Below are positions 20,606 through 64,000 of a stretch of 64,000 nucleotides of DNA, piece by piece. The DNA lies in IMG/VR virus record IMGVR_UViG_3300017971_000190, positions 157,680 to 221,679 of that record; one strand, written 5' to 3'. The notes under the pieces are model-generated. The model was given only the letters and a program-made list of their open reading frames with translations. It was not told the DNA's origin and made no database searches. The position numbers and the translations under genes are program-made. Every line of letters starts with the position of its first letter. The stretch's first letter is position 1.

Positions 20606-22924
20606 TTAACCTAATTCATCTCTACGGACATACCCCGTAAGAGTTTTATTATGAGGAAGACTTCTCTCTCTATTAGAGAGAATGTTCCTAAATTGATCAA
20701 CAGAAAGTGGCCTTATTTCATTTTCATTGTGACCACTTAATCTAGCCAGGGCGACTAATTCATTAGCAATCGCTTTTGTCATTCTACCATTCATGCGGGT
20801 AGTAATATATTTACTGAGTAGACTATAGATTTCAGAACTGAGTTCAACAGGAGGAATATAACCTAATCGTATAGCTATATAAAGTATGGATTGCGCTTGA
20901 ATATCATTAAATCCTTCTTTGCGTAAGCCTTTATAAAGAGTAGAAGCTAATTTAATTCTTTCATCTTCGTGAGGATCTGTTTGAGCCACCTTGTAAAGTA
21001 CTTGTGCAATACGTCTTTTTGGTAAAGAGAAAAATGTTTCATTTTCATCCCAAAGCGGAAGTTCACTCAATAAACCAATAATATCTTTTCCAAGTATTCG
21101 ATAGTTAGATTTCTTAACACGATGAGGAGCAGCGTAAACTTCTTTGGTCGGTTTTTTGGGTTCAACTGGAAAACGAGCATGGTCTAAAGCAGCTCCAGCA
21201 CCTTCTTCACCAGCAGGCGCTTCGGCAGGGGGGGCAGGTTCTTCACCGAAACCACCCCCGGGTTCTTCACCGAAACCACCACCAGGTTCTTCTCCAAAAT
21301 CAAATCCTTCTTCCTCTCCAAAACCACCACCACCTAAACCACCTTCTTCTCCTTCACCCCCAACGTAAGTATCGTTTTCATCAAAACCCATTTTAGTACG
21401 AAGTTCAGCAACAGCTCGTTTATACTCGTACATTTTCTTACGAGTTTCTAAATCGCTTTTTGAATTTTCTAGTTCTTCATCAATATCTAAACCGCCTGCT
21501 TGGTAGAAGGTACGCATATTTAAAATGCCACCCTCTTCTTTAAGAGTGCGAAGAAGCTCCATATAAGCTTCATCACGAGTAGGAGTAAGAGGTCTACTCC
21601 ACTCGATTTTGGGAATGATTAAATCACTAACAGCTTTATTTTTGGGTCTAGCGATTCTGTAACGGTGATTTATTTCTGCCGTTTTCCTTTTAACAAAATC
21701 TTCTTGTTCTGACAACTGACGACACATTTTATCAATTATAATTTTTTTGGTAAAATAAGAACGAAGGTATTGTAGTTTTTCAATAAAGACCGTTCTAATG
21801 GTCTCCATACTATTCCAATTACTTTCACCAGTAACCAGTGTTTCACTAACTCCTAAAGCCCTCATTTTTCCTTCAACAAGGAAAGGCCATTCGTCAGAGA
21901 ATTTCCAGTAATCAGCAGAACCACCACCAACACTGGTAACTTCAACATCTTTTTTGGTTACAACTTTAGCTCCAACTGGATCTTCTTCACTAGCGAAGAA
22001 CAGATCTAACAATTCTTGAAGCTCTTCAGGAGTAGCTCCTTCAGGACCAGTAATATGAAGGAGGGGGCCAGCTCTACGACGAGCACCAGCAATAGATGCG
22101 TTATAAATAGCACTTTCATAAACCTTAAAAATGAGAACTCTGTTAAGATAACTACTGCCTTTACAATCCCAAGAGAAAGCACGACGGGGAAGGAAAATAG
22201 TATTTTCAGGAGACAGCGGAATCTGCTTTCCAGCTGCCATTAATTTAACAATTACTGGATCTATTTGAAGACGATCTTCCACCACTCGGGGGTCTTTAGA
22301 CGTTGCCCAAGATCTTTGTTCAGCTGTTGGTTGAATATCGATAATGGCGTTCCCACCAGGAGTTTCAGGATACTGAATAGAAAGGAAATTCAAATTGTGC
22401 GCAATTACTCCATCCCAATAATTAAGGCTATCGTTATAAAGCAGGTGAGCTACAAATTTACCAAAAGTAAGGAAGTCATGTAACAACTCTGGCATAAGAG
22501 GAATCATGCCACTAGAGTAAAGAGCATCTTCAAAAAATTGTTTTTGATAGGAATCAACTACACCGCTAACAATGATATCTTCAGAAAAAGCAAGATCTTT
22601 CCAGTATTCTAAAGTAGGACTAACAATTGGATCAAATGTAGCAATTTCCTCGTACATTTTATTCTGACTGGCGCTATCACCAGGAAGAAATTGCTCTCCT
22701 AAAGTAGGAGCTTCAGCGCGATCTGTAACAGGGCTATATTCTTGATTTAAATTACCAGCAGCTGGGGTTAAAGAATTACCATAACCAAAACCGCCAACAC
22801 CATAGCCTCTTCGTTGTATAGCTCCCAAACGCTTTTTACGTTGTGTGCTACTAGCTCCGATAGCTCTTCTAGAAGAGCCTCTTCGGAGTCTCCCTTTTGT
22901 AAGGTCATAACGGATGTTAAACAT
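20606..22924 (-). CDS. portal protein
   Basis: 772 aa; next to TerL and upstream of the protease; layout (helical body, Gly/Glu low-complexity tail) resembles large-phage portals. Confidence 0.7.
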   Translation of the reverse strand: MFNIRYDLTKGRLRRGSSRRAIGASSTQRKKRLGAIQRRGYGVGGFGYGNSLTPAAGNLNQEYSPVTDRAEAPTLGEQFLPGDSASQNKMYEEIATFDPIVSPTLEYWKDLAFSEDIIVSGVVDSYQKQFFEDALYSSGMIPLMPELLHDFLTFGKFVAHLLYNDSLNYWDGVIAHNLNFLSIQYPETPGGNAIIDIQPTAEQRSWATSKDPRVVEDRLQIDPVIVKLMAAGKQIPLSPENTIFLPRRAFSWDCKGSSYLNRVLIFKVYESAIYNASIAGARRRAGPLLHITGPEGATPEELQELLDLFFASEEDPVGAKVVTKKDVEVTSVGGGSADYWKFSDEWPFLVEGKMRALGVSETLVTGESNWNSMETIRTVFIEKLQYLRSYFTKKIIIDKMCRQLSEQEDFVKRKTAEINHRYRIARPKNKAVSDLIIPKIEWSRPLTPTRDEAYMELLRTLKEEGGILNMRTFYQAGGLDIDEELENSKSDLETRKKMYEYKRAVAELRTKMGFDENDTYVGGEGEEGGLGGGGFGEEEGFDFGEEPGGGFGEEPGGGFGEEPAPPAEAPAGEEGAGAALDHARFPVEPKKPTKEVYAAPHRVKKSNYRILGKDIIGLLSELPLWDENETFFSLPKRRIAQVLYKVAQTDPHEDERIKLASTLYKGLRKEGFNDIQAQSILYIAIRLGYIPPVELSSEIYSLLSKYITTRMNGRMTKAIANELVALARLSGHNENEIRPLSVDQFRNILSNRERSLPHNKTLTGYVRRDELG
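21236..21300 (-). repeat. 24-nt coding repeat (GEEPGGGF) in the portal tail
   Basis: FGEEPGGGFGEEPGGGFGEEP. Confidence 0.85.
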
Positions 22925-23453: not shown

Positions 23454-25784
23454 TTAAAACCTTCCTCTGTTACCACCATTGTGGGATTGTCTTCTGGTTT
23501 GTTGTCGTCCTTGAGGGGAACGTCCTCTGCCTGATCGTCTAGCTCTACCACCACCGTAAATATATTTAGGAATATTAAACATTCCTGCAATTGGTTTATT
23601 GGCTCTTTTAAACCCCATTGCTTCCATACCAGCTCTACGGTATTTGAAACGGCTTTTCTTTTCAAATTCCTTTTTGTAAGATTTTATAAATCTGTGGGCT
23701 AGAACTGTAGTTCTAAAAAGGTCATCATTGCCAATATCGGGTTTAAATAATTTACGATTAAAAACATTAACAGTAAGTATTTGAGCTAGACAGTGAGAAC
23801 GAGGGTACATAGATCTCATCGCCAAATCTCTAGTTTTTAAAATAGAATCAATGTCGCTATCTTGAGTATTAAATCGTATCTTATTTCCGCCTAGGTCATG
23901 ACGGAAATTTTTGAAATCGTTAAAAGTCAAGCTGTAACGTTCGCTAATTACGTTGTGTTTAGTTCTTAAATCATAAAAAGCATGAGCACTTTGCCAACGG
24001 TCATACGCTACATAGAGTACATTGAATGAGTTAACAATAGGAACAATTACATTATCGTATGCCCAAGCTAAATCTACACTCATACCGTTTCTAGGAGCTA
24101 CCTCCATTAACTCTTCAATGTACGCACCATCCAACTCGGGAAGGTAACGAGCAAAAGTAAGAGCAAATGAATTCTTCTTTTCTCCGTTGTCAACAGCTAA
24201 AGCATAAGCATAGAGGTTGTTCTTTTTAGGAATTTTTACTTCTGGTTGAAGTGTTTGTAATCCTAAGTCGCTTTCATTTTCTTTTATGACGTAAGTAAAA
24301 GCTGGCTCTGGTTCGGTCATCTCATAAACTAAATCTTCTAGTAGAGTTTGATCTTTAAAAAACGGGTTACTTGCCTTTGGAGGAATAGCATAGAAATCAC
24401 GGAGAATATCTTCTTCCGGTTCTCCTGCAAATTCGTCTCTGATTGCTTCTTCTGTTTGTTTAGGGTTAACTTCCCAGGTAGCAAAATGCGTATAGTAAAT
24501 TCGAGGATTTTTAGCAGCCACTTCAGCCCGTTGCATGATCGGGTCTCCGATAGAAGACGGGCTACTAATGTTTGCCATTATTGCGTCTATGGCATTATAA
24601 TCTCCATTTTTACGTCTAATATCTGCTGCTGCACGAAGTGTTCTTAAATTATTTGTAAGAGAACGGAAAATAGCCGAACCATCTCGTACTCTTCTTTTTC
24701 TACCTTGATCATCATAATTAAACCATCCAAGCTCATCTATGATATTTATGAGACCTGTTTTTCCGCGAAGATTGGAACTGTTAGCTGCTGCCATAGAAAG
24801 AGCAAGACGTTTGCTAGGAAAGGTAAGAAATGTTTGCCCACTTTGAAAAAGATCTAAACCTAAACGTCTACCCTCATCTTTAAGGTAAGAGGCCACACTT
24901 TTAAACCAAGGACTACTGCGCAAAGCATCGCAAAACGGTACCCAAGAAAATTCGCTGCTCTGTTTGAGTGTAGGTGATACAAATGTACCACTCACAATTT
25001 TATTAGCAGGCTCATCAAAATAAGCCATTGGATTTTCAAGGGCAAGATAACGATGAATATGGTATGTAGCTACAAATGTAGAAGCACTGTGACTTTTACC
25101 GCTCCGCTGTCCCCAAATAGAGCACAGTTCATTAGGAGGTACAGGTCTTAATCTGGAAAGTGCATAATCTCCGTAATCATTATATTTGTGGAATTTTGGA
25201 TCCACAATCCATTCCTGCAACATCTCTGTTCTGTTACGTTTGCAGACAGGACAAACACCATGTTCTAAAAGAACAAAACGCTCCATAAGCTCGCCATAAT
25301 TAGCATCTACTGGAACGTCAAAAATATAATCTAAATCTGAACAACTATAACAAGCATCTCTATTAAAATGAACAACTACTTGAAATTGTTTTGCATAAGG
25401 TTTAGTAGAACTGTTTAAAAAAGAGGGACTAATAATCCAATCTATAATGTTAGACGCTTCTGGGAATTTTTGGTCTGCAAAAACTCCCATATCAAAATTA
25501 GAGTCAATAGCTTTCTCAATTAAATCTTCCGGATTAGGTAATTTGTCAGGATCTGAAGGAAGGGAGTCAAAATTAACTACATCGTAAACAACATTGAAAA
25601 AGTCAATTTCTTCTATTGTAGGAGTAGGTAACTCGGTAGTAATTAATTCTGCGACTAATGGTGATTTCTTTTTCTTTTTACGACGTTTTTTCTTTTTTGT
25701 TTTAGTCTTGTCCTTTTTAGATGCACTTTTGGGCATCTCCTGAACAGCATTGATTTTAGGAGAAAGGAAATCTACTTTTTTCAT
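23454..25784 (-). CDS. terL: terminase large subunit
   Basis: Walker A GQRSGKS, Walker B IIDE, coupling motif ISSP, RNase H-like nuclease LAVD. Confidence 0.9.
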   Translation of the reverse strand: MKKVDFLSPKINAVQEMPKSASKKDKTKTKKKKRRKKKKKSPLVAELITTELPTPTIEEIDFFNVVYDVVNFDSLPSDPDKLPNPEDLIEKAIDSNFDMGVFADQKFPEASNIIDWIISPSFLNSSTKPYAKQFQVVVHFNRDACYSCSDLDYIFDVPVDANYGELMERFVLLEHGVCPVCKRNRTEMLQEWIVDPKFHKYNDYGDYALSRLRPVPPNELCSIWGQRSGKSHSASTFVATYHIHRYLALENPMAYFDEPANKIVSGTFVSPTLKQSSEFSWVPFCDALRSSPWFKSVASYLKDEGRRLGLDLFQSGQTFLTFPSKRLALSMAAANSSNLRGKTGLINIIDELGWFNYDDQGRKRRVRDGSAIFRSLTNNLRTLRAAADIRRKNGDYNAIDAIMANISSPSSIGDPIMQRAEVAAKNPRIYYTHFATWEVNPKQTEEAIRDEFAGEPEEDILRDFYAIPPKASNPFFKDQTLLEDLVYEMTEPEPAFTYVIKENESDLGLQTLQPEVKIPKKNNLYAYALAVDNGEKKNSFALTFARYLPELDGAYIEELMEVAPRNGMSVDLAWAYDNVIVPIVNSFNVLYVAYDRWQSAHAFYDLRTKHNVISERYSLTFNDFKNFRHDLGGNKIRFNTQDSDIDSILKTRDLAMRSMYPRSHCLAQILTVNVFNRKLFKPDIGNDDLFRTTVLAHRFIKSYKKEFEKKSRFKYRRAGMEAMGFKRANKPIAGMFNIPKYIYGGGRARRSGRGRSPQGRQQTRRQSHNGGNRGRF

Positions 25785-41092: not shown

Positions 41093-43858
41093 TTAAACCC
41101 TAACCGGTACATCCGGATCAATTATAATTACACAGCGTTGATTGCCACCATAATTACTAGCATCTAAAATTATTCCTGCTTTAGTTTGAAAATTATTTGA
41201 ATTTTTAATAGGAACGTCGTTTCTAAATTGCCCAGGATTAACCCAACTCAAAATAGCTGGATCTCCAGCAACAGGAGCAGGTACCAAAGCAGCATCAAAT
41301 TGTACTTCTACTTTTCCTGAATTTACTACTTCTCCTATGACAGCATTGTACACACCAACAAAGGTAGCTGATTTAAAAGAACCTGTGGCAGCAGAACAAT
41401 CTGTAGGGGAAATAGTATTATCCGCACTTACATATCCAGCTTGATACTGAACCATAGCAGAAGTATCAAGCCCGTTTATTTTTAACTCTTCATGATAATG
41501 TAAACCGTCAGCATTTGAGCCATCTAAAAGTGTATCCACATTGCTAGAAGTAAAGTTAGGAGTGGTTAATGCAACTCCCCCAATACTAAACCCTGTACCA
41601 CTTGGAACATCTAGCGTCGTAACATTGGTTTGAAGGTCTACTAAAGTAGAAGTGGCGTATATATCACCATTTATGTCTAAACGAGGAATTGAAAAATCCC
41701 CACCAATTAGTGGAGTAGCCGTACTACTATTGGCGATGTATAATTTATTACTTCCAAGTTCATTTTGCCCAGCATTGTGGCCGAGCATAACATTTCCACT
41801 CGCAGCACCAGTTAAACTGAGCCCAGTACTATTACCGATGCAAACATTTTGGCTTCCTGTGAGACCTACTCCAAGATCTCCCAAAGCACTTGACCCGACA
41901 GCTACATTATTATCTCCAGCTGTAGCACCGTAATGAGCACGAACCCCTACAGAAACATTATTTGATCCGGAAATTAAATTAACACTTGCGCTGCGTCCTA
42001 GTGCAGTATTATTAGATCCTCCAGAAGCTGCTTCAAGTGCTTTGTGACCTACAGCCGTGCTACTACTGCTGGCTCCATCTCTAAGAGCATGCCAACCAAC
42101 AGCAGTATTTCGAGTAGTTCCAGTTGTAACTGAACATGTTTCTTCACCTATGGCAACTGTTTCAGCAGTAGAATTACTTCCACTCATAGCATTGTAGCCA
42201 ACAGCTACATTTGAATACCCATTAGTAAGGGCTACTAAAGAATTTTCTCCTACGCCTACATTTGCTCCACCAGTAAGAGTAAAATTACCTGAATTTAATC
42301 CTAAGAAAGTATTGTTGGTGCCGTAAATGTGTAACGCTGGAGTAGTATCAAAAGAAAGAACACCAACAGTAGAAGAAATAGTAATTGGTAAATCAAAACG
42401 ATTGAAATAAATATTGGCCCCCCTATTTAAAGAGGTTCCTATATCCAACCCGGTAACTAAGACATCTGTTTTAATATCTACATAAAGTCCCGCTGGATTA
42501 AGACCAAAAAATTGAGTGTACCCAATTTCGTTTAGATCAGCTACGTCAGTAGGGTTGGTTTTATGTTCAAGCCAAAGAGTTGACGTTGGGCCAATTAAGC
42601 GAGTTCTGAATGCTTCTACGTTACCAGTCCCATCTCCCGCAGCAACAACATGTCCAGCTACTTCTCCAGTTGCACCATTTGCATCGTAGTTAATTACAAA
42701 AGGTTCAGCAGATGTTTGTAGAAGATCTGCATTGATCGTCAATTCACTAGAAGTAAAATCTCCATAAATTAATGGAGGATTGACAGTATTATTTGAAATA
42801 TAAAGTTTGTTACTTCCTACTTCATTTTGACCAGCTCTCCAACCGATAAAGACATTTTCAGATCCAGTAGCATTAATACCAGCTTGATAACCTACTACTG
42901 TATTCTTACTTCCAGTTAGATTATTTTGAAGAGAGTCTGTTCCGATTGCTATATTTTGATCACCACCAGTATGTAATTCGAGAGCACTATTACCAATGGC
43001 AATACAATCTCTAGAAGCTACTGAAGAATAAAATGATCTGTATCCTATTGCAACATTGTCATGACCATTATCATTGGAATAAAGGGCTTCATGGCCAAGT
43101 GCGGTGTTAGCGTCTCCAACTGTAATTTGATAGCCAGCTCTATACCCGACAACAGTATTATTAGCTGCGGTGGTTGTAGCTTTAAGAGTTTCTTTTCCTA
43201 TTGCTGTATTGCCTGAACCGGTGAGAGTTAGATTTCCAGAATCAGATCCTAAAAATAGGTTATTTACCCAGTAAGAGTGTAAAAATCTTTTTGAGTCTAC
43301 AAAAATAATTCCTTCAGGAACCGAGGTAGTAGAAGGTAAATAAATATTTGGACCGGAAATACTACCAGCATCTAAGGCGTCAGCGTAAAGTGTCCCAGCT
43401 CTATTGGCAGGATCTCCTAAATCATACCCTGTGGCATAAAAGTTATTATCAATATTTACAATACCAGTTCCATGTGGATCTAGTGTAATATCCCCATTAT
43501 TAGAAGTGGTAATTGTTTGGCCGTTTATCAGTGTGGTGGTAGCATCAATGCTGAAAGGAATTTCAACACTAAGAGTTCCACCATAAAAACGATGAGCACC
43601 AAAAGCAGGAACTGTAAAAGAACCACCACCCCCTACTTTTAAATCAGCTCCTCCATCAGTTCTTAGTTCTGCACCAACCCCCCATACTTGAAAATCATGT
43701 CCATTTTCTACATACACATCTTTTTGAGTAGGAGAACCTCCAATTGTTAATCGACCAGACTGGGGAGCAATATTGCCAGCAAGAAGAGTATCTGTATCTG
43801 CAATTTCCCCATGAATGCGTTGAATGACATCAAAATATACTGTTCTATAGCTTCCCAC
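41093..43858 (-). CDS. fibre/adhesin with YadA-like beta-roll repeats
   Basis: Many approx. 14-aa repeats NTA(I/V)G..AL....G..N in two arrays; C-terminal cement-like module. Confidence 0.75.
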   Translation of the reverse strand: MGSYRTVYFDVIQRIHGEIADTDTLLAGNIAPQSGRLTIGGSPTQKDVYVENGHDFQVWGVGAELRTDGGADLKVGGGGSFTVPAFGAHRFYGGTLSVEIPFSIDATTTLINGQTITTSNNGDITLDPHGTGIVNIDNNFYATGYDLGDPANRAGTLYADALDAGSISGPNIYLPSTTSVPEGIIFVDSKRFLHSYWVNNLFLGSDSGNLTLTGSGNTAIGKETLKATTTAANNTVVGYRAGYQITVGDANTALGHEALYSNDNGHDNVAIGYRSFYSSVASRDCIAIGNSALELHTGGDQNIAIGTDSLQNNLTGSKNTVVGYQAGINATGSENVFIGWRAGQNEVGSNKLYISNNTVNPPLIYGDFTSSELTINADLLQTSAEPFVINYDANGATGEVAGHVVAAGDGTGNVEAFRTRLIGPTSTLWLEHKTNPTDVADLNEIGYTQFFGLNPAGLYVDIKTDVLVTGLDIGTSLNRGANIYFNRFDLPITISSTVGVLSFDTTPALHIYGTNNTFLGLNSGNFTLTGGANVGVGENSLVALTNGYSNVAVGYNAMSGSNSTAETVAIGEETCSVTTGTTRNTAVGWHALRDGASSSSTAVGHKALEAASGGSNNTALGRSASVNLISGSNNVSVGVRAHYGATAGDNNVAVGSSALGDLGVGLTGSQNVCIGNSTGLSLTGAASGNVMLGHNAGQNELGSNKLYIANSSTATPLIGGDFSIPRLDINGDIYATSTLVDLQTNVTTLDVPSGTGFSIGGVALTTPNFTSSNVDTLLDGSNADGLHYHEELKINGLDTSAMVQYQAGYVSADNTISPTDCSAATGSFKSATFVGVYNAVIGEVVNSGKVEVQFDAALVPAPVAGDPAILSWVNPGQFRNDVPIKNSNNFQTKAGIILDASNYGGNQRCVIIIDPDVPVRV

Positions 43859-56131: not shown

Positions 56132-57298
56132 TTACTTCCTTTTCTTCCCCCAGGTTGATTTTCCAATAGAAATTGCTTCGATAGCCACACTTTCCAAAAC
56201 TGCATGAGCATTGATTGTATAGCTTTTAATAGATGCTTGAGCAGAAAGTAGGAGCTTGAGCATAGTATTAATATCTTGAATATGTTTAAGAGCTACCTCA
56301 CGTCCTACATGTTGTACATTTTTGACCGCCCAAAATTTAGATCTATCAGTAAGTTTTTTATCCACCCAACTAGTAAGTAACAAATGCAAAATTAAAACTA
56401 TTTGATCAATAAAAGATGTATGGTTTTCTACACTATTTACAGCTTGAAAAGCCAATGCTAAATCGAGAGAGAAAAGAGCACTGACATAATCTTGAGAAGC
56501 CAAGTAAGGCTTAGCCGCAGCACTCTCGCGAAGTATGGTTGGAAGATGTTTTTTAATATCAACTGACTTGCCTGCTGTCCTAACATAATTTACCACACTC
56601 TCTAACAGAATCAAGGCATCTCTTGGATGACCGTTAACCACACCAGCTATTTCTTGTCTAGTCTTTTTTGTTAAGTTCAATCCCTCTTTTTTGCCTATTC
56701 GGAGAAGTAATTTAGATGTAAGAGCCGGAGAAATAGGACGTAGTATAAATTTAGTAGCTCTACTACGGATAGTATTAGGCAACTTTTCTGGTTCAGTGGT
56801 ACAAAGAATAAATCGACTATCCCCAGGAGGATGTTCAAATGTTTTAAGAGCTGCTTGCCAAGCAGGACCAGTAATTTGGTGACACTCGTCCAGAATAAAA
56901 ATTTTGTAACGAGTAATAGGAGCATATTCGGCTTGCTCCTGAAGATTCCGCATATCTTCTATTTTTCGTTTATCAGCTGCATCTATTTCTTTAACATCTG
57001 GATGGGTACCTGTCCCCATTATAACAGAGCGCATAGCCTTACAACTATCACATTTTCGGCAAGGTTCACCCTGAGGAGTGAGTTTTTCACAATTGGCATA
57101 GAGAGCAATTAACCTAGCGAGGGTAGTTTTACCAGAGCTGTAAGGACCGGCTAAAAGAATAGTAGGTGGAATAGTTTTTGCTTCTACCATTCCTCTAATT
57201 TTTTGAACAGCTAAGTCTTGTCCAATTACCGTTTTAAGAGAACGAGGACGGTATTTGATAGCAAGAGATATATTTTTTGGGGCGTTTTCGGTTGTCAT
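56132..57298 (-). CDS. dnaX: DNA polymerase III gamma/tau-like clamp loader
   Basis: KYRP..VIGQ, GPYSSGKTT, C..PC..C..C zinc module, ILDECH, SRA. Confidence 0.92.
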   Translation of the reverse strand: MTTENAPKNISLAIKYRPRSLKTVIGQDLAVQKIRGMVEAKTIPPTILLAGPYSSGKTTLARLIALYANCEKLTPQGEPCRKCDSCKAMRSVIMGTGTHPDVKEIDAADKRKIEDMRNLQEQAEYAPITRYKIFILDECHQITGPAWQAALKTFEHPPGDSRFILCTTEPEKLPNTIRSRATKFILRPISPALTSKLLLRIGKKEGLNLTKKTRQEIAGVVNGHPRDALILLESVVNYVRTAGKSVDIKKHLPTILRESAAAKPYLASQDYVSALFSLDLALAFQAVNSVENHTSFIDQIVLILHLLLTSWVDKKLTDRSKFWAVKNVQHVGREVALKHIQDINTMLKLLLSAQASIKSYTINAHAVLESVAIEAISIGKSTWGKKRK

Positions 57299-58929
57299 GA
57301 CTTCTTCTTTACAAACAGTTTAGTCGGTTTTCCAATACGACGTTTTGCAATTCGAGCATACTCTTTATTTAACTCCATACCAATAAAAGTACGATTAAGA
57401 AGGCGAGCTGCTATACCTGTAGTTCCGCTACCACAATACGGATCTAAAACAATATCTCCAGGACGTGACCCGAGAGTAATTAAATAACTCATAAGTGTAA
57501 CGGGTTTTACCGTTGGATGGTGATTTGCCATTTTAGAAGGTGGTTTACCATCAATACGAGATGGTTTTTTCATCCTTCTACCTCTATGCCTAGCAATAGG
57601 ATCGCTTATTTTTTCCGGTAAATCTTCTAAACCAACATTCTTTTCTTTTTTACTAGGTTTAGGAACAATAAGAAAAGGAAAAGTCTTTTGAGCTTTACTA
57701 GGTAAGTCATTTACAAATTTTAAAAACCAAGCATCTAAATCAAAATAACGAGAAAATGAACCAGAATCTCCAATAGTTTCAGCATTGGTTTTCTTGGGCA
57801 TTTTACCACTATATCCTTTTCTATTTCTACGCTTAGTATTGGCTTTCATTTTACCACTAGTTCGTTTAAAACCATCATTTAAACTGTCATCACTTACAAG
57901 AATATTAGCAGGGAAACGACCCTCAGACGACATATAATAATCTACACCGGACCATACATAAGAATCATCGTTGAAATTATTCCCTGGTACACCTATATTA
58001 AGCACTGTTACAAAATCTTTAGTAGGAATTCTACAATCTCCCAACCAAGTACAACCTTTACCATTTACCAAAGCTTGAGTAAGAAATGTCTTAAAGGTGG
58101 TATTTTTGTATGGTTTACTTTCCAGTTTTTTCTTACCGCACCACACTTCATCTTTTAAATCAGGATTAAGAGCCAAACGTCGTTTAACTGTTTTACCAAT
58201 TTTGATATATTTTTTGGACCCGTATTTTTTCTGCAAAGCTGCAATTTGTTTTTTAGTTTTCAGTTTCCTTACGCTAGTGTACCAATAATCCCAACCAATG
58301 CTCTGATAGAGTTGTTCTCTTGTCACTTTTTCGATTGGTTTCATTACGCATAAGATGACTTCTGTGGCGGGTTTGGGTTGGAATCCTCCAAAAGATCCAT
58401 CCAGTTTTTTTGCTTCTGGAGTAGTTGGAATTGTATCGTCTGGTTGATCTTGAACAACTCCAAATTTTGTTTCTCTTTTTTCTTTGTACCGTTTTCCTTT
58501 ATAACCACCTTTTTTAGAATTCGGATTACTAGAGCTTAATCCAGATTTTTTACGTTTTTTATCGGCTTTCTTATCAGCTTCTTTACTAAGATTAGTACCT
58601 TTATTCATTCCTGTAGCAAATGTCCAGTAAAGACTGGTGAAATTGGTTTCAAATCCAGCCTCTTGTAAATTTAAAATCATTTTGCTGAGACAGTCTTGAC
58701 GAGGAATGCATTGTACAAAAGCGAAGCCACCAGGTTTAAGGACTCTAAAACATTCTTTCCAAACTTCAACAGGTGGTACAGCCTTATCCCAAAAAGGTTT
58801 AGATGCCATAAAGTTCAATCCATAAGGTGGATCTGTAACAATTAAGTCTACACAATTTCCAAAAGGAATGGATTTTAATCGCTCTAAACAGTCCCCCTGA
58901 TAAATGTGGTAATGACATTGTAAAGACAT
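57295..58929 (-). CDS. N6A/N4C DNA methyltransferase (beta class)
   Basis: TDPPYG, HPTVKP, LDPYCGSGTT. Confidence 0.92.
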   Translation of the reverse strand: MSLQCHYHIYQGDCLERLKSIPFGNCVDLIVTDPPYGLNFMASKPFWDKAVPPVEVWKECFRVLKPGGFAFVQCIPRQDCLSKMILNLQEAGFETNFTSLYWTFATGMNKGTNLSKEADKKADKKRKKSGLSSSNPNSKKGGYKGKRYKEKRETKFGVVQDQPDDTIPTTPEAKKLDGSFGGFQPKPATEVILCVMKPIEKVTREQLYQSIGWDYWYTSVRKLKTKKQIAALQKKYGSKKYIKIGKTVKRRLALNPDLKDEVWCGKKKLESKPYKNTTFKTFLTQALVNGKGCTWLGDCRIPTKDFVTVLNIGVPGNNFNDDSYVWSGVDYYMSSEGRFPANILVSDDSLNDGFKRTSGKMKANTKRRNRKGYSGKMPKKTNAETIGDSGSFSRYFDLDAWFLKFVNDLPSKAQKTFPFLIVPKPSKKEKNVGLEDLPEKISDPIARHRGRRMKKPSRIDGKPPSKMANHHPTVKPVTLMSYLITLGSRPGDIVLDPYCGSGTTGIAARLLNRTFIGMELNKEYARIAKRRIGKPTKLFVKKKS

Positions 58930-58936
58930 TTAAAAA

Positions 58937-59857
58937 CTAGTCGGCAAAAACTCTGGCAAATATTTCCTCTGGGCTTTTATCACTAGTGAATCCAGAAGCA
59001 GCTTTGTGTCCACCACCTCCAAAATGCTGGGCAAAAGAAGAGACGTCAAAACCATTATCACTAGCTCTCAAACTATAAACGTACTCACCGTCATTTTTCT
59101 GAAACCAACACACTCCCATATCACAACCTTTTACTAAGGCCAACTCTTCTCCAACTTCACTTTGCAGAATAGGACTATTGGCAATCATAACTTTAACAAC
59201 AGAAAAACCAGGAACAGAAGCTGCAACTCCAGGCCACGCTCCAGCTAGTAAAGATTTTTTCTGTTGATCTTGTGACCTTAAAATAGCTGCTCCATAACCA
59301 GAAACAGCATTTGGCAGTGTGGGTTCAGCGTCAGAAGATGTTTTAAGAAAATTTAGAATTTGAATCCAGGTTTCAATGTCTCTAGGCCAACTAGCTAACC
59401 ATGCGTTTACTTCTCTGCTTCCCAATAATTTCCATTGCCACAAATCTCTATCCTGAACGTAACCAACTAATTGTTCAAGAATAGATTTGATTTCTTTAAA
59501 CTCTTTGCTAGCAGCTGTAGGCAAACCTTTTACTAAATCAAATGCGAGTTGTGCTCCACTTCTGTTCATATCAAAAGTGGCAAAATCTAAACCTTCACAA
59601 TTGTTTTTAGCAGTTTCGTGATGATCTAAAACAATAAGATTGGAGGCAATTTCGTTCATGTGCACTAACGTATCTCGTGAATAACTAAAATCGACAATCC
59701 ATATGTCTCTATCTGTAATAACTTCATCTGGAGGAGGATCTTCTCCATATTGAGCAGACATGACTTCTGCTTTTTCACCCAAGCCTAAATAGAGAACAAG
59801 GGCTCCACAAATCCCATCACTACAACCCCGGTGATGTATAATCAAAGATTCTTCCAT
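58937..59857 (-). CDS. DHH/DHHA1 phosphoesterase
   Basis: CSDG, VDFS, LDHH, GGGGHKAASG. Confidence 0.9.
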   Translation of the reverse strand: MEESLIIHHRGCSDGICGALVLYLGLGEKAEVMSAQYGEDPPPDEVITDRDIWIVDFSYSRDTLVHMNEIASNLIVLDHHETAKNNCEGLDFATFDMNRSGAQLAFDLVKGLPTAASKEFKEIKSILEQLVGYVQDRDLWQWKLLGSREVNAWLASWPRDIETWIQILNFLKTSSDAEPTLPNAVSGYGAAILRSQDQQKKSLLAGAWPGVAASVPGFSVVKVMIANSPILQSEVGEELALVKGCDMGVCWFQKNDGEYVYSLRASDNGFDVSSFAQHFGGGGHKAASGFTSDKSPEEIFARVFAD

Positions 59858-60918
59858 TAGACTTTTTTCTTTCGCTTGTATTGTTTAGGAATAGGAACTT
59901 TAACACCTAAACTTTTTCCAATTTTCCTCAAATACCGCCAGCTGCGACCTTTCATCTTGTGGCTTAATCCAGCTTCATCTAAGTAGTCGTCAAGTTGAGC
60001 AAATAATCCAAACTCTATATTTTCTAGATTGCTTGTTCTTTGACGTTTAAACAACTTAGCATTTGGATGATATTTAACATTTGGAGGCAATTCTCCAACA
60101 GCAGCATCTGCGAGAGTTTCGGGTTCAAAATCTATAAAAGCATCTGACGGAATTTCTTCTGGTAATTTTGAACAATGTATAAGCGGTGAGCTAGTAATTG
60201 GAATAATTTCAGGTTCGGTAGGATTATCTGTATCTACTAAAAGAACACCTTTGGGTAATTTTTCATCAAAGCGAGTTTGATGAGGTGAACCACTATACCA
60301 GGCATTGGAGATTATCTTTTGGCACTTGTGAACATCTCCCAAAGCCCAGTAGGTAACTCTTGGAAACAAATTTTCCACAAGTACAATTTGTCCCCCTTTT
60401 TCTTTTACAAAACCTGTATCTGTTTTTGCCCCTCTTAGATATTCATGAAGTACAACCACAATAGGTAAATCATCTTCTGGAATATTTTCTAAGATAGCTT
60501 CAAGCAGTAACCTAAATTCGTTATTAGTCCAGTCTGCAAAAGGGAACAGAATAAAATAACAACCCTTTTTCTTAAAGAAAGAAGGGTAATTATCATAAAC
60601 AAAATGTTTTTTATGTTTTATTTTAGAAAGATAGCTAAGGGACGTATCCCCCAAATCTTCAGATCTATCTTCATGATTTCCGCTTATAGCAATAATAGGA
60701 AGGGGGCATGAACCAAGCCAATCGCTCAATAGTTGCCGTTCAAGGTGAGTAATACTTTTACTATGATAAATATCTCCAGCTACTACAATTAAATCAGCTT
60801 CATGTATAACAGCAATATCAGTTATACTCTGAAGTGTCTTCTCCACCCTCCTTAAAAATCCATCAAATTCTCTAAGGGCATTCAGGTGAATATCCGCCGT
60901 ATGGAGGAAACGAGTCAC
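59857..60918 (-). CDS. sbcD: SbcD/Mre11-like metallophosphoesterase nuclease
   Basis: ADIH, GDIYH, GNHE, LGDVH. Confidence 0.88.
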   Translation of the reverse strand: MTRFLHTADIHLNALREFDGFLRRVEKTLQSITDIAVIHEADLIVVAGDIYHSKSITHLERQLLSDWLGSCPLPIIAISGNHEDRSEDLGDTSLSYLSKIKHKKHFVYDNYPSFFKKKGCYFILFPFADWTNNEFRLLLEAILENIPEDDLPIVVVLHEYLRGAKTDTGFVKEKGGQIVLVENLFPRVTYWALGDVHKCQKIISNAWYSGSPHQTRFDEKLPKGVLLVDTDNPTEPEIIPITSSPLIHCSKLPEEIPSDAFIDFEPETLADAAVGELPPNVKYHPNAKLFKRQRTSNLENIEFGLFAQLDDYLDEAGLSHKMKGRSWRYLRKIGKSLGVKVPIPKQYKRKKKV

Positions 60919-60966: not shown

Positions 60967-61296
60967 TTAAAGGTCCCAGCCGCGCACAGTCTTACGACCA
61001 TTACGAAGGGTGCGAAGACACGCTTTTTTGATCATAGCATAAAGCTCATTGGCCAGCCATGCCTCAATATCTTTCTCAGCACGAAGACCGGTAGCTTTCA
61101 GCACTTCCTTAACCTTAGAAGTAGTCACAATTTTAACACCCACGTCTGCTTTCGCTTTCTTAATGCGAGCTTTTACCTGCTTTGCTGTAGGTGCATCACC
61201 AGCAGGAGTTCCAGCTTTCTTGTTTGTACTTCCCTTAGGACGCCCGCGCTTCTTAGGAGCTGCATCTGTTTTCTTTGTTCTCTTCTTTTTTGGCAT
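60967..61296 (-). CDS. bacterial-type histone-fold protein with Lys-rich N-terminal tail and AT-hook
   Basis: C-terminal IVTTSKVKEVLK..GLR..........L..MIKKAC......GRKTVRGWD resembles Bdellovibrio Bd0055 (VVTSKVKKLIK...GRKTVMARD, recalled); RKT-x4-D clamp. Confidence 0.85.
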   Translation of the reverse strand: MPKKKRTKKTDAAPKKRGRPKGSTNKKAGTPAGDAPTAKQVKARIKKAKADVGVKIVTTSKVKEVLKATGLRAEKDIEAWLANELYAMIKKACLRTLRNGRKTVRGWDL

Positions 61297-61325: not shown

Positions 61326-61829
61326 CTACGGTTCAGTTACAATCACAACCTTATTTGATTTTCCGAAGTACGATTTAACAATTTTTCTCACTTCTTTTTT
61401 CCAATTTAAACCACCATTCCCACACCCGGGTTTTGGTAATAACACTCTCCTCCAATTTCTTTTCAATATCAGTTTATTTAACTGTTTACAACTTGTTTCT
61501 ATAAGCTCTAAATCCGCTTTATCTTTCCAGTGATACTTAACAGGAAAGGATACAATATGCCACGGAACAGCCACCAAAAGAGGATCTGTTCTCCTAGGTA
61601 AAGAAAGATAAGGAACCGCAGCATCGTTTTTAGTTAGAACCCTAACTCTGTTTCCTTTTTTACTTAATTTAGTGCCTAGTAACTTTTGTAGACCATACCA
61701 AGAACGAGCCGCTTGAAGTGCGACTCCTCTCCCCATTACTGCACCACCATCTTTTTTAACATCTCCGTTGGTAGTAATAACAATGGCATCCGCTTTTTCG
61801 AGAAACATATTACAACGTTTAATTTTCAT
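61326..61829 (-). CDS. macrodomain (ADP-ribose binding/hydrolase) protein
   Basis: ADAIVITTN..GGAVMGRGVA, IVSFPVK, LPKPGCGNGGLNW. Confidence 0.88.
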   Translation of the reverse strand: MKIKRCNMFLEKADAIVITTNGDVKKDGGAVMGRGVALQAARSWYGLQKLLGTKLSKKGNRVRVLTKNDAAVPYLSLPRRTDPLLVAVPWHIVSFPVKYHWKDKADLELIETSCKQLNKLILKRNWRRVLLPKPGCGNGGLNWKKEVRKIVKSYFGKSNKVVIVTEP

Positions 61830-63145
61830 TAGCTCGCCATTTCTTCTTCTAGTTCTTCATCATTTCTAGTTTGTTTTTTAGAACGTTTTTTCCCTTTTTT
61901 ACCTTGCTTACGTCTGCGTCTACGTAAGTCTCTGTATTCAGATCCTTCTTCTTCTACGCGACGTTGAACCTCTTCCTGATCTATTTCTTCTTCTTCATAT
62001 TCTTCAAAATCTTGATCATAGAAATAATTTTGAGGTCCGTCATGTTGCATATATTCTTCAAATACCCTATCTTTTTTCAAACGCCTGAATAAAAAAGCTC
62101 TAAATTTCGGATTTTCAACATGTTGTCGGAATTTCATCCAACTGAGCTTCTTAGTTTCTTTTTTGGGGAAAACAATTTGACGCAATCCATTACCAGTTAC
62201 TTTAAGATGACCAGTCTTTTTAAGGAAGACTTCAGCATCTAGAGATCTATCTAAACCACGTGCAAGAATAATTCCTAATCCCTCTAAAATCCGGTGAGGC
62301 ATAAATACTTTATTTTTTGTTGTTCTAGCTGTAATCGGAAGAACATCAACTTTGGTTTTATCTTTAACCAGTTTCCGTCTGGTAAGCATTATTTTTTGGT
62401 CAGGATAATACATAAGGGCAGCTCCACCATATTCTTTTTGTGGATTGCCCCATTGACCAATTGCAGTTCTCATTTGATTAGAACCTAGTAAAAGAGCGCC
62501 TTTCCTCTTAAGACGTGGGCGAATCATTTGAAGGAAATTGCTATGCATTCTAGCTTGCGGAGCAATACGACCCTCACCAGTTTCGTCGTCTACTTCTTCA
62601 GAACTCATAGCAGCAAAACTATCTACCAAAAATACAATTTGAGGTGGTTTATTTTCTACCTCTGGGAGGGCTTTTAAAGTAACGAGAATATGTCTGTACA
62701 TTTGTTCACCAAAATCAGGCTGACAATAAAAATAATTCGGGTACTCAATCTTATTACCTGTTTTAGCTGGTGTCCCATTTTTATTAATCTTTGGCAAAAC
62801 AATGCTGTGATCTAGATCGATACCTTGATTACTCATGTAAACCGGATCAGATCCACTTTCAAAATCATAATGAACTACAGTAATAAAATTCATTTGACAA
62901 CTAACAATTAATTCCTGCAATAGTGTACTCTTCCCACAACCTTCTGGCCCGAAAATAGTTACAAATTTTCCTGAAGGAAATCCACCCCCTAAAATTAAAT
63001 CTATAGAAAGGCTACCAGAAGATACAGTATTGTGTACTCGTCTAGCCTCTTTAAGAGGAGCACAATCCAAACCTTTAACAGCTTTAAAAGCATTAATGGC
63101 TGCAATTGCTGGATGAAATGCAAAGACGGGTTTCTTGGCTCCCAT
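61829..63145 (-). CDS. recA: RecA-family recombinase with charged C-terminal extension
   Basis: SLSIDLILGGG, GPEGCGKST, VDSFAAM, NQMR..IG..GNPQ...GG.AL.Y. Confidence 0.92.
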   Translation of the reverse strand: MGAKKPVFAFHPAIAAINAFKAVKGLDCAPLKEARRVHNTVSSGSLSIDLILGGGFPSGKFVTIFGPEGCGKSTLLQELIVSCQMNFITVVHYDFESGSDPVYMSNQGIDLDHSIVLPKINKNGTPAKTGNKIEYPNYFYCQPDFGEQMYRHILVTLKALPEVENKPPQIVFLVDSFAAMSSEEVDDETGEGRIAPQARMHSNFLQMIRPRLKRKGALLLGSNQMRTAIGQWGNPQKEYGGAALMYYPDQKIMLTRRKLVKDKTKVDVLPITARTTKNKVFMPHRILEGLGIILARGLDRSLDAEVFLKKTGHLKVTGNGLRQIVFPKKETKKLSWMKFRQHVENPKFRAFLFRRLKKDRVFEEYMQHDGPQNYFYDQDFEEYEEEEIDQEEVQRRVEEEGSEYRDLRRRRRKQGKKGKKRSKKQTRNDEELEEEMAS

Positions 63146-63567: not shown

Positions 63568-63762
63568 TTATCGTTTGATTGAAAGCAGTATCGTGTTTAA
63601 ATCCACACAAGGAGCTAACCAGATACACTTTTTGCACCGTGGTTTTTCACGATAATAACCATAGCAAGTTGGACTATTTCTTGCGCTTCTTTTTAGTTTT
63701 CTTATTTTTGCTGCCCTTTGGACGTCCACGCTTTTTCGGAGCTGCCTTTTTCTTTTTGGCAT
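63568..63762 (-). CDS. candidate small Cys4 protein overlapping the poly-Asp gene in another frame
   Basis: MPKRKRQ...CYGYYREKPRCKKCIWLAPC; weak SD. Confidence 0.4.
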   Translation of the reverse strand: MPKRKRQLRKSVDVQRAAKIRKLKRSARNSPTCYGYYREKPRCKKCIWLAPCVDLNTILLSIKR

Positions 63763-64000
63763 CTTTGCGCTTCTTACTATACCTACGTTTCTTAGGCGCT
63801 GGTTCTTCGTCATCATCGTCGTCGTCATCATCATCGTCATCATCGTCATCATCATCATCATCATCGTCGTCATCGTCGTCGTCATCATCGTCGTCATCAT
63901 CGTCGTCATCATCGTCGTCATCATCGTCGTCATCATCGTCATCATCGTCGTCATCATCGTCGTCATCATCGTCGTCATCATCGTCGTCATCATCGTCGTC
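63674..64000 (-). CDS. C-terminal part of a poly-Asp/AT-hook protein (5' end outside window)
   Basis: Manual translation: D64-EEPAPKKRRYSKKRKDAKKKKAAPKKRGRPKGSKNKKTKKKRKK-stop (TAG at 63674). The supplied MMTT.. ORF is a shadow frame. Confidence 0.85.
   Translation of the reverse strand, partial: DDDDDDDDDDDDDDDDDDDDDDDDDDDDDDDDDDDDDDDDDDDDDDDDDDDDDDDDDDDDDDDDEEPAPKKRRYSKKRKDAKKKKAAPKKRGRPKGSKNKKTKKKRKK
63809..64000 (-). repeat. GAY codon repeat encoding at least 64 consecutive Asp
   Basis: Uninterrupted mixed gtc/atc triplets up to the window edge. Confidence 0.95.

What the first reader, a model, noticed from the sequence alone, without database searches (positions are those of the whole stretch)
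60967..61296. Phage-encoded bacterial-type histone with a eukaryote-like N-terminal tail
Seen: residues about 53-109 form a three-helix histone-fold pattern ending at RKTVRGWDL with no C-terminal extension. Residues 1-52 are a K/A/P/T-rich tail containing an AT-hook. The resemblance to Bd0055 is from recalled sequence. Known: such histones occur in Bdellovibrionota and Leptospira, among others, and some phage histones are reported. A tailed, AT-hook-fused version may be undescribed. It also hints at a histone-using host whose own histone could be poisoned through heterodimers.
Basis: partly seen in the sequence, partly recalled or inferred. Interest (0 to 1): 0.9.

Follow-up and report, generated by a model that had tools for sequence, protein, structure and literature searches.

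The report
Jumbo-phage face-to-face histone with AT-hook tail
A giant bacteriophage encodes a real bacterial-type histone with a long, positively charged N-terminal tail; tailed phage histones of this kind were catalogued in 2025, so it is a new member of a known class with a few undescribed details.

Summary
The 109-aa ORF at 60967-61296 (-) is a real, conserved gene of a jumbo phage (portal, TerL, contigs of 222-298 kb). Residues 56-109 are an alpha3-truncated histone fold. A family profile hits solved histones HLp (E 6e-17), HTkC (2e-11) and HBb/Bd0055 (5e-8). The AlphaFold model superposes on HLp at TM 0.90, 0.7 A. [quoted passage not shown] Residues 1-37 are a disordered basic tail (net +11) with a canonical AT-hook core (KKRGRPK). 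Residues 38-52 (38-56 in the second model) form a conserved extra helix (alpha0). The tail is under purifying selection (dN/dS about 0.1). The gene is a fixed part of a RecA / histone / SbcD / clamp-loader / Rad50 / ligase module across a monophyletic phage clade. Lysine-tailed 'viral face-to-face histones' in Caudoviricetes were already described (Liu et al., hLife 2025), so the central novelty claim fails. The AT-hook, alpha0 and the conserved module position appear undescribed. There is no evidence for a histone-using host or for heterodimer poisoning. The proposed function, wrapping and condensing DNA during phage replication, is inferred and not shown.

The parts
60967..61296 (-). Whole gene: 109-aa tailed face-to-face histone (the stop codon is 60967-60969)
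   Evidence: ORF list; homologs and synteny; family profile vs PDB
61186..61296 (-). Residues 1-37: disordered basic tail (net +11, pI 11.3)
   Evidence: AF2 models: no secondary structure, pLDDT about 50-58; composition; dN/dS 0.12
61234..61254 (-). Residues 15-21, KKRGRPK: AT-hook core (RGRP flanked by basic residues)
   Evidence: K16, R17, G18, R19, P20, G22 and S23 are invariant in the 4 close homologs; GRPKGS is also in P0005, 51% identical in the domain; definition from PMC11526092; shuffle frequency 0.017%; dN/dS 0.07 over residues 14-24
61141..61185 (-). Residues 38-52: extra N-terminal helix alpha0, specific to the phage clade
   Evidence: Helix 38-52 / 38-56 in two AF2 models, pLDDT up to about 80; the P-x-x-K...(F/A)..E.G.K pattern is conserved in all 34 clade members, including short-tailed ones; absent from HLp, whose first residues are unresolved
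60970..61140 (-). Residues 53-109: alpha3-truncated histone fold (alpha1 59-68, L1, alpha2 77-98, L2, alpha3 106-108) with an RxTxxxxD motif (R101, T103, D108)
   Evidence: invariant R95, N99, R101, T103 and D108; HLp DNA-contact residues conserved
61326..61829 (-). Upstream neighbour: DarG/TARG1-type macrodomain protein, adjacent to the histone in the window's sublineage (context, not part of the histone)
   Evidence: Pfam Macro, weak; profile vs PDB 5m3i 1.5e-12; NCBIfam DarG 4e-20
59857..60918 (-). Downstream neighbour: SbcD/Mre11-type nuclease, directly after the histone in every contig that extends downstream, except L003 (outside the clade) and L024 (downstream ORF cut and unannotated)
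   Evidence: Pfam Metallophos; NCBIfam sbcd 5e-19; synteny
61829..63145 (-). RecA-like recombinase, conserved two genes upstream of the histone
   Evidence: Pfam RecA 1e-31; synteny

Best explanation
The gene encodes a phage version of a face-to-face (FtF) alpha3-truncated histone. The C-terminal 54 residues fold and dimerise like HLp of Leptospira. Two dimers most likely join through the R95/N99/R101 hydrogen-bond network into a ring-shaped tetramer whose basic rim binds DNA without sequence preference and wraps roughly 60 bp. Each subunit adds a clade-specific helix (alpha0) and a 37-residue disordered basic tail. The tail's AT-hook can insert into the minor groove of A/T-rich DNA, so a tetramer carries four extra DNA anchors (about +44 charge). 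These should raise affinity, neutralise charge and allow bridging or condensation, much as H1/HMGA-type tails do. The gene is inherited and presumably co-transcribed with the RecA / SbcD-SbcC / clamp-loader / ligase genes. It therefore most likely acts inside the infected cell on replicating and recombining phage DNA (about 39% GC), organising or shielding it, and not in the virion. Shown: fold, family, conserved functional residues, tail constraint, synteny. Inferred: tetramer, wrapping, AT preference, target DNA and timing.
For: Family and fold: profile E-values are HLp 5.9e-17, HTkC 1.6e-11, HBb 5e-8. Foldseek gives HLp TM 0.86-0.90 (rmsd 0.7 A), HTkC 0.81-0.85 and HBb 0.71-0.77. Relatives carry Pfam PF00808, PF09123 or PF00125. 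FtF signature: R95, N99 and R101 correspond to HLp R49, N53 and R55 and are invariant in 34/34 clade members. DNA contacts: HLp S14, K15, K17, K21 and R59 correspond to S60, K61, K63, K67 and R105, all identical, and are mostly conserved in the clade. HLp itself is a tetramer that wraps about 60 bp and reorganises the E. coli nucleoid. Tail: net +11, RGRP core, dN/dS 0.07-0.12. A second, unrelated viral FtF histone (L003) starts with MPRGRPRK. Context: the module RecA - X - histone - SbcD - clamp loader - Rad50 - ligase is seen in whole or in part in about a dozen independent contigs at 35-92% identity. The structural genes lie elsewhere in the window. There is only one histone-fold ORF in 64 kb, which fits a homo-oligomer.
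Against: Two HLp interface positions differ (S52 to R98, T61 to W107). alpha0 or the Trp could change the assembly. Pfam, NCBIfam and PHROGs do not recognise the protein directly. The AT-hook is present only in the window's own lineage and in L003; most clade members have plain K/A-rich tails or almost none, so it is an accessory and not the core mechanism. A/T tracts are not enriched in the window (z -2 to -3 for long tracts). The 10-10.5-bp WW periodicity (z 3.4-3.9) is not specific. No promoter or terminator evidence bears on timing. Nothing shows whether the target is phage or host DNA.
Confidence: 0.6

Rival explanations
1. Same protein chemistry, different target: an early host-takeover factor that condenses the host nucleoid and shuts off host transcription or replication.
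For: HLp expressed in E. coli dramatically reorganises the nucleoid. A very basic tail would bind any DNA. The host is unknown, so a host A/T bias cannot be excluded.
Against: The gene sits inside the replication and recombination module, not among small early genes. The position is conserved across a deep clade. The phage genome itself is A/T-rich at about 39% GC, so it would be bound as well.
Confidence: 0.2
2. It works like HBb/Bd0055: a dimer that bends or coats DNA without forming a wrapping tetramer.
For: HBb is a significant hit (5e-8; TM 0.71-0.77). Interface positions 98 and 107 differ from HLp. alpha0 might block face-to-face docking.
Against: Bacterial dimer histones lack logo residues R48 and N52. 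Here R95 and N99 are invariant. The FtF structures are consistently the better matches.
Confidence: 0.2
3. A virion-internal DNA-condensing protein packaged with the jumbo genome.
For: Large genomes need charge neutralisation. Giant-virus histones are packaged (general knowledge).
Against: The gene is not in the structural module (portal, terminase and virion proteins lie at about 5-47 kb). It always lies between RecA and SbcD. Packaging motors translocate naked DNA (established phage biology).
Confidence: 0.08
4. One reading: the phage histone poisons a host histone by forming non-functional heterodimers.
For: Histone folds do heterodimerise in general. The clade has its own signature residues R72 and Y86.
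Against: There is no evidence that the host has histones. The DNA-binding and tetramer residues are all intact and conserved, which is the opposite of what a poison subunit would show. The family is old and vertically inherited in phages. Fewer than 2% of bacterial genomes have histones (paper text).
Confidence: 0.03

Closest known systems
[quoted passage not shown]
   Same: Phage-encoded, FtF-like alpha3 histone fold, lysine-rich N-terminal tail, mined from IMG/VR, where this phage is also found.
   Different: That paper gives tails of 5-40 aa. It mentions no AT-hook, no alpha0 helix, no jumbo phages and no gene context. I could not check whether this exact protein is in their set, because no supplements are held.
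HLp of Leptospira perolatii (PDB 9QT0-2), bacterial FtF histone
   Same: 40% identity over a gapless 53 residues. It shares the RD clamp, the tetramer residues R/N/R, the five main DNA-contact residues and a C-terminal hydrophobic residue. TM 0.90, rmsd 0.7 A.
   Different: HLp has only about 10 residues before alpha1. Here there are 55, made up of alpha0 and a 37-aa basic tail with an AT-hook. S52 becomes R98, T61 becomes W107 and K54 becomes G100. HLp is cellular and essential; this one is phage-encoded.
HBb / Bd0055 of Bdellovibrio bacteriovorus (PDB 8CMP, 8FVX), bacterial dimer histone
   Same: Alpha3-truncated fold and RKT...D motif.
   Different: HBb lacks the R and N needed for the dimer-dimer contact and acts as a dimer that bends DNA. 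It is a weaker match than the FtF histones on every measure.
'Phage histones' of Schwab et al. 2024 (A0A2E7QIQ9; equivalent to VTTH of Liu et al.)
   Same: Alpha3-type histone fold encoded by tailed phages.
   Different: Those have the fold at the N-terminus, a C-terminal tetramerisation helix and no RxTxxxD motif. This protein has the opposite layout and an intact motif.
HMGA AT-hooks and H1-type basic tails of eukaryotes
   Same: RGRP core flanked by K/R; disordered K/A/P/T-rich composition.
   Different: There is a single hook fused to a histone fold. This is analogy only; nothing suggests common descent. No modification enzymes for the tail are evident.

Membership tests
Alpha3-truncated histones (Schwab et al. 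2024) | Histone fold: alpha1 - loop - long alpha2 - loop - alpha3 | tested here: met
   AF2 helices at 59-68, 77-98 and 106-108. The top Foldseek hits are all histones.
Alpha3-truncated histones (Schwab et al. 2024) | Alpha3 reduced to 3-4 residues, with no C-terminal extension | tested here: met
   Alpha3 is residues 106-108 and the protein ends at L109. At most one residue follows the motif across the clade.
Alpha3-truncated histones (Schwab et al. 2024) | RxTxxxxD motif (RD clamp) | tested here: met
   R101, T103 and D108 are invariant and align with HLp R55, T57 and D62.
Face-to-face (FtF) histones | Conserved dimer-dimer residues (logo R48 and N52; HLp R49, N53, R55) | tested here: met
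   R95, N99 and R101 are invariant in 34/34 clade members.
Face-to-face (FtF) histones | Torus-shaped homotetramer (the feature that defines the class) | not testable with these tools
   Only single-chain prediction was available. Interface positions 98 and 107 differ from HLp.
Face-to-face (FtF) histones | Closer to solved FtF histones than to other histone classes | tested here: met
   Profile E-values: HLp 5.9e-17 and HTkC 1.6e-11 against HBb 5e-8. TM scores: 0.90 and 0.85 against 0.76.
Bacterial dimer histones (HBb / Bd0055 type) | Absence of logo R48 and N52; no assembly beyond the dimer | tested here: not met
   Both residues are present and invariant.
'Phage histones' sensu Schwab 2024 / VTTH | N-terminal fold plus a C-terminal tetramerisation helix; no RxTxxxD motif | tested here: not met
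   The fold is C-terminal, there is no C-terminal extension, and the motif is intact.
Viral face-to-face histones (Liu et al. 2025) | Encoded by Caudoviricetes | tested here: met
   Portal, TerL and virion proteins are in the window. It matches an IMG/VR contig. TerL is distantly related to jumbo myoviruses.
Viral face-to-face histones (Liu et al. 2025) | Lysine-rich N-terminal tail of 5-40 aa | tested here: met
   The disordered tail is 37 aa with 10 K and 3 R. Counting alpha0, the extension is 52-55 aa.
AT-hook motif | R-G-R-P core flanked by positively charged residues | tested here: met
   K15-K16-R17-G18-R19-P20-K21. The core is invariant in close homologs.
AT-hook motif | Recognised by a curated profile | tested here: inconclusive
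   The Pfam scan at E up to 10 lists no AT_hook match. The motif is too short for that scan to be decisive.
AT-hook motif | Binds the minor groove of A/T-rich DNA | not testable with these tools
   This needs EMSA or footprinting with A/T-rich and G/C-rich probes.
Pfam histone-fold families (CBFD_NFYB_HMF PF00808, DUF1931 PF09123, Histone PF00125) | Score above the gathering threshold | tested here: not met
   The query itself has no hit at E up to 10. Many profile-linked relatives carry these domains.

The most novel reading that the evidence does not exclude
A deep clade of (jumbo) phages maintains its own chromatin protein as a core component of recombination-dependent replication. This is an FtF histone with a clade-specific alpha0 helix and an expandable, eukaryote-like basic tail. 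The tail has acquired AT-hooks independently at least twice, and in this lineage the gene sits next to a DarG/TARG1-type ADP-ribose hydrolase. If the histone coats replicating phage DNA, it could act as a physical shield against host nucleases or DNA-modifying defences. Its tail could also be a regulated (modified and de-modified) element, which would be the first phage 'chromatin' with tail-based control.
Probability: 0.15. Interest if true: 0.8.

Novelty: new member of a known kind. Interest (0 to 1): 0.42.

Why it matters
Histones in bacteria were accepted only in 2023-2025, and phage-encoded ones have so far only been catalogued, never tested. Two major jumbo-phage overviews do not mention histones at all. 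This case adds a clear, testable example. It has intact DNA-binding and tetramer residues, a constrained basic tail with an AT-hook, and a fixed place between RecA and SbcD in a conserved replication/recombination module. That context points to a role in handling replicating phage DNA. It also offers a simple system (a 109-aa protein that should be expressible in E. coli) for asking what histone tails and AT-hooks add to a minimal histone. It does not overturn anything.

Tried and rejected
- Direct family scans of the protein (Pfam, PHROGs, NCBIfam) gave no meaningful hit. The PHROG 14814 hit (E 5e-4) covers the low-complexity tail and was ignored.
- tblastn against 50,697 GenBank phage records found no match.
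- The genome-contig scan returned only FtsH AAA+ lid domains carrying 'RAVRNGRKTV'. These are false positives for membership.
- The metagenome scan added one locus (L011) besides the window's own contig. The rest were short C-terminal-only matches like the FtsH hits.
- The promoter/terminator scan gave nothing above the shuffled expectation.
- No tRNAs were found in the window.
- Host inference failed. TerL is only 26-29% identical to jumbo phages of Pseudomonas, Erwinia, Rhizobium and Ralstonia, which is too distant to use.
- A/T-tract enrichment was absent. The WW 10-bp periodicity is present, but the control does not remove protein-helix periodicity, so it is not evidence.
- alpha0 amphipathicity was not significant (p = 0.17).
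- I considered a macrodomain-histone functional pair by analogy with macroH2A. It was rejected as a general feature, because the slot between RecA and the histone holds unrelated ORFs in other lineages.
- No supplementary tables of Liu et al. are held, so I could not check whether this protein is in their list.
- No multimer prediction is available.

Full report
**1. The observation**

The minus-strand ORF at 60967..61296 encodes 109 residues. It starts at an ATG, with AAAGGAAA 6-13 nt upstream and an in-frame stop 12 codons further upstream. The sequence ends ...RNGRKTVRGWDL. Residues 1-52 are K/A/P/T-rich (net +16, pI 11.3) and contain KKRGRPK.

**2. The window is a jumbo phage**

- The window carries a portal (20606-22924), a large terminase (23454-25784), virion structural proteins (41093-43858) and a DNA ligase.
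- Almost all genes are on the minus strand, and GC is about 39%.
- The identical gene lies on contigs of 221,679 bp (IMG/VR, JGI) and 298,061 bp.
- TerL is only 26-29% identical to terminases of jumbo phages such as PaBG and phiRSL1 and the Erwinia and Rhizobium jumbo phages. This is a deep-branching lineage with no host assignment.

**3. It is a histone, of the face-to-face type**

The single sequence hits nothing in Pfam, PHROGs or NCBIfam. It does hit PDB 9qt0 at E 5.8e-4, gaplessly over residues 56-108.

An exhaustive HMMER search with residues 50-109 against 1.84 billion representatives found 36 relatives. A profile of 21 singlets then hit solved histones:

| PDB entry | Protein | Class | Profile E-value | Foldseek TM, model 1 / model 2 |
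|---|---|---|---|---|
| 9qt0 | HLp, Leptospira perolatii | FtF | 5.9e-17 | 0.86 / 0.90 (0.7 A over 53 columns) |
| 9f2c | HTkC, Thermococcus kodakarensis | FtF | 1.6e-11 | 0.81 / 0.85 |
| 8cmp, 8fvx | HBb / Bd0055 | bacterial dimer | 5e-8, 1e-7 | 0.71-0.77 / 0.76 |

A wider profile search found 384 relatives. Many carry precomputed Pfam CBFD_NFYB_HMF, DUF1931 or Histone domains and the JGI name 'histone H3/H4'.

Two AlphaFold models agree: residues 1-37 disordered, alpha0 38-52/56, alpha1 59-68, alpha2 77-98, one-turn alpha3 106-108, with fold pLDDT 75-86. Eukaryotic H4 follows the three prokaryotic histones in the Foldseek ranking.

**4. Residue-level comparison with HLp (HLp paper numbering + 46)**

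- **Tetramer network:** HLp R49, N53 and R55 correspond to R95, N99 and R101. These are invariant in all 34 clade sequences.
- **RD clamp:** R55-D62 corresponds to R101-D108.
- **DNA binding:** the five residues that dominate HLp's DNA-binding energy (S14, K15, K17, K21, R59) correspond to S60, K61, K63, K67 and R105. All are identical and largely conserved in the clade.
- **Contrast with dimer histones:** Schwab et al. state that bacterial dimer histones such as HBb lack logo residues R48 and N52. HBb aligns E and D there.
- **Differences from HLp:** S52 becomes R98, T61 becomes W107, and K54 becomes G100.

The protein passes the sequence tests for FtF histones and fails the test for dimer histones. 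The defining FtF feature, the torus tetramer, could not be modelled here.

**5. The N-terminal extension**

It has two parts.

- **alpha0.** This helix (38-52/56) follows a conserved pattern (P-x-x-K ... F/A-x-x-E-x-G-x-K). The pattern is present in every clade member, including those with almost no tail, and absent from HLp.
- **The tail.** Residues 1-37 are disordered, with 10 K, 3 R, 5 P, 5 T and 5 A.
- **The AT-hook.** K15-K21 meets the published definition, an RGRP core flanked by basic residues. Such a core occurs in 0.017% of shuffles of the extension. K16-P20, G22 and S23 are invariant in the four close homologs while neighbouring tail positions vary.
- **Selection.** Across those four genes synonymous sites are saturated, yet dN/dS is 0.12 for the tail, 0.07 for residues 14-24 and 0.01 for the fold.
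- **Distribution.** Among about 22 basic-tailed relatives, the GRP core occurs only in the window's lineage (P0001-P0005). An unrelated viral FtF histone without alpha0, on a 70-kb myovirus-like contig, begins MPRGRPRK (L003:7890-8168). The hook is therefore a recurrent but lineage-specific addition to a generally basic tail.

**6. Evolution and context**

In a tree of 233 fold domains, all 23 basic-tailed and 9 alpha0-only proteins form one clade (SH-aLRT 97, stem 0.53). It is separate from short singlets and tandem doublets that look cellular. The alignment is short, so internal branches are weak.

Nearly every contig long enough to judge shows all or part of the same order: primase ... sigma factor ... 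RecA - variable ORF - histone - SbcD/Mre11 - clamp loader - Rad50/SbcC - three ORFs - ligase. The two exceptions are L003, which lies outside the clade, and L024, where extra ORFs (including an HNH) precede the histone and the downstream ORF is cut and unannotated.

In the window, a DHH protein and a DNA methylase are inserted after SbcD. The variable slot holds a DarG/TARG1-type macrodomain, which other lineages lack. No second histone-fold ORF exists in the 64 kb. No cellular genome among 185,579 species representatives matched the subfamily pattern; the only hits were FtsH lid domains. No GenBank phage record matches.

**7. Mechanism (inferred)**

By homology with HLp, which is a tetramer in solution, wraps about 60 bp, compacts DNA and reorganises the E. 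coli nucleoid, the protein most likely forms homotetramers that wrap DNA non-specifically. Four basic tails with AT-hooks would add affinity, charge neutralisation, some preference for A/T-rich minor grooves, and possibly bridging.

Its fixed position in the recombination-dependent replication module, away from the structural genes, suggests it acts on intracellular replicating phage DNA. Alternatives are host-nucleoid condensation, HBb-like dimer bending, and virion packaging. Heterodimer poisoning of a host histone has no support and is contradicted by the intact, conserved functional residues.

The window's DNA shows no A/T-tract enrichment. Its 10-10.5-bp WW periodicity is not specific.

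**8. What is already known**

- Schwab et al. [quoted passage not shown]
- Hu et al. 2025 solved HLp.
- Liu et al. (bioRxiv 2024, hLife 2025) mined IMG/VR and defined viral face-to-face histones in Caudoviricetes with lysine-rich N-terminal tails of 5-40 aa.

This protein fits that last class. In the searchable literature I found no mention of an AT-hook on any prokaryotic or viral histone. I also found no experimental study of a phage FtF histone and no mention of histones in two major jumbo-phage overviews.

**9. Verdict**

The protein is a new member of a known kind. Its modest undescribed features are the AT-hook, alpha0 and the conserved module position. Interest is moderate.

Noticed in passing
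window 61326-61829 (-): A 167-aa DarG/TARG1-type macrodomain protein lies directly upstream of the histone. It is 56-59% identical in the window's sublineage (profile vs PDB 5m3i 1.5e-12; NCBIfam antitoxin_DarG 4e-20, macrodomain part only). It is a candidate counter-defence against DarT-type DNA ADP-ribosylation. Other lineages have unrelated ORFs in this slot.
   Followed up: partly
window 63807-64000 (runs off the end): A 12-bp tandem repeat (TCGTCATCATCG, 16+ copies, 91% matches). The 'MMTTMMTT' ORF at 63568-63993 is largely this array and may not be a real gene.
   Followed up: partly
window 57295-59857 (-): A DHH/DHHA1 phosphoesterase and an N6/N4 DNA methylase lie between SbcD and the clamp loader. 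Relatives have DHH only (L027) or neither (L002, L015, L021, L023). The methylase's Pfam match spans residues 27-529 on a 221-position profile, which implies an insert of about 300 aa.
   Followed up: no
window 61829-63145 (-): The RecA-like recombinase has a C-terminal tail of about 70 aa that is highly charged: an acidic stretch followed by a K/R-rich stretch.
   Followed up: no
L003:7890-8168 (+): An independent viral FtF histone (92 aa, 35% identity, no alpha0) begins MPRGRPRK, followed by an acidic/basic tail. It sits beside thymidylate kinase, thymidylate synthase and DHFR on a 70-kb contig that has a tail-sheath-like gene. This suggests convergent gain of an AT-hook.
   Followed up: partly
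proteins P0012, P0019, P0031, P0037, P0099: Tandem-doublet relatives of the histone fold carry N-terminal signal-peptide-like hydrophobic segments. This suggests exported or periplasmic histone-fold proteins.
   Followed up: no
proteins P0020, P0051, P0053, P0058, P0064, P0068 and others: A large group of 119-aa tandem doublets (pseudodimers of the alpha3 fold) occurs on contigs up to Mb scale. One is annotated as Candidatus Peregrinibacteria. In the tree the N- and C-halves form separate clusters.
   Followed up: partly
L004-L009, e.g. L006:2882-4699 (+): The AAA+ lid domain of FtsH carries 'RAVRNGRKTV', nearly identical to the histone alpha2-L2 motif. This produced false positives in the pattern scans.
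   Followed up: yes
window 1-64000: WW dinucleotides show a 10-10.5-bp periodicity (z 3.4-3.9 against codon-order shuffles). Long A/T tracts are slightly depleted (z -2 to -3). GC skew is uniformly negative, and nearly all genes are on the minus strand.
   Followed up: partly
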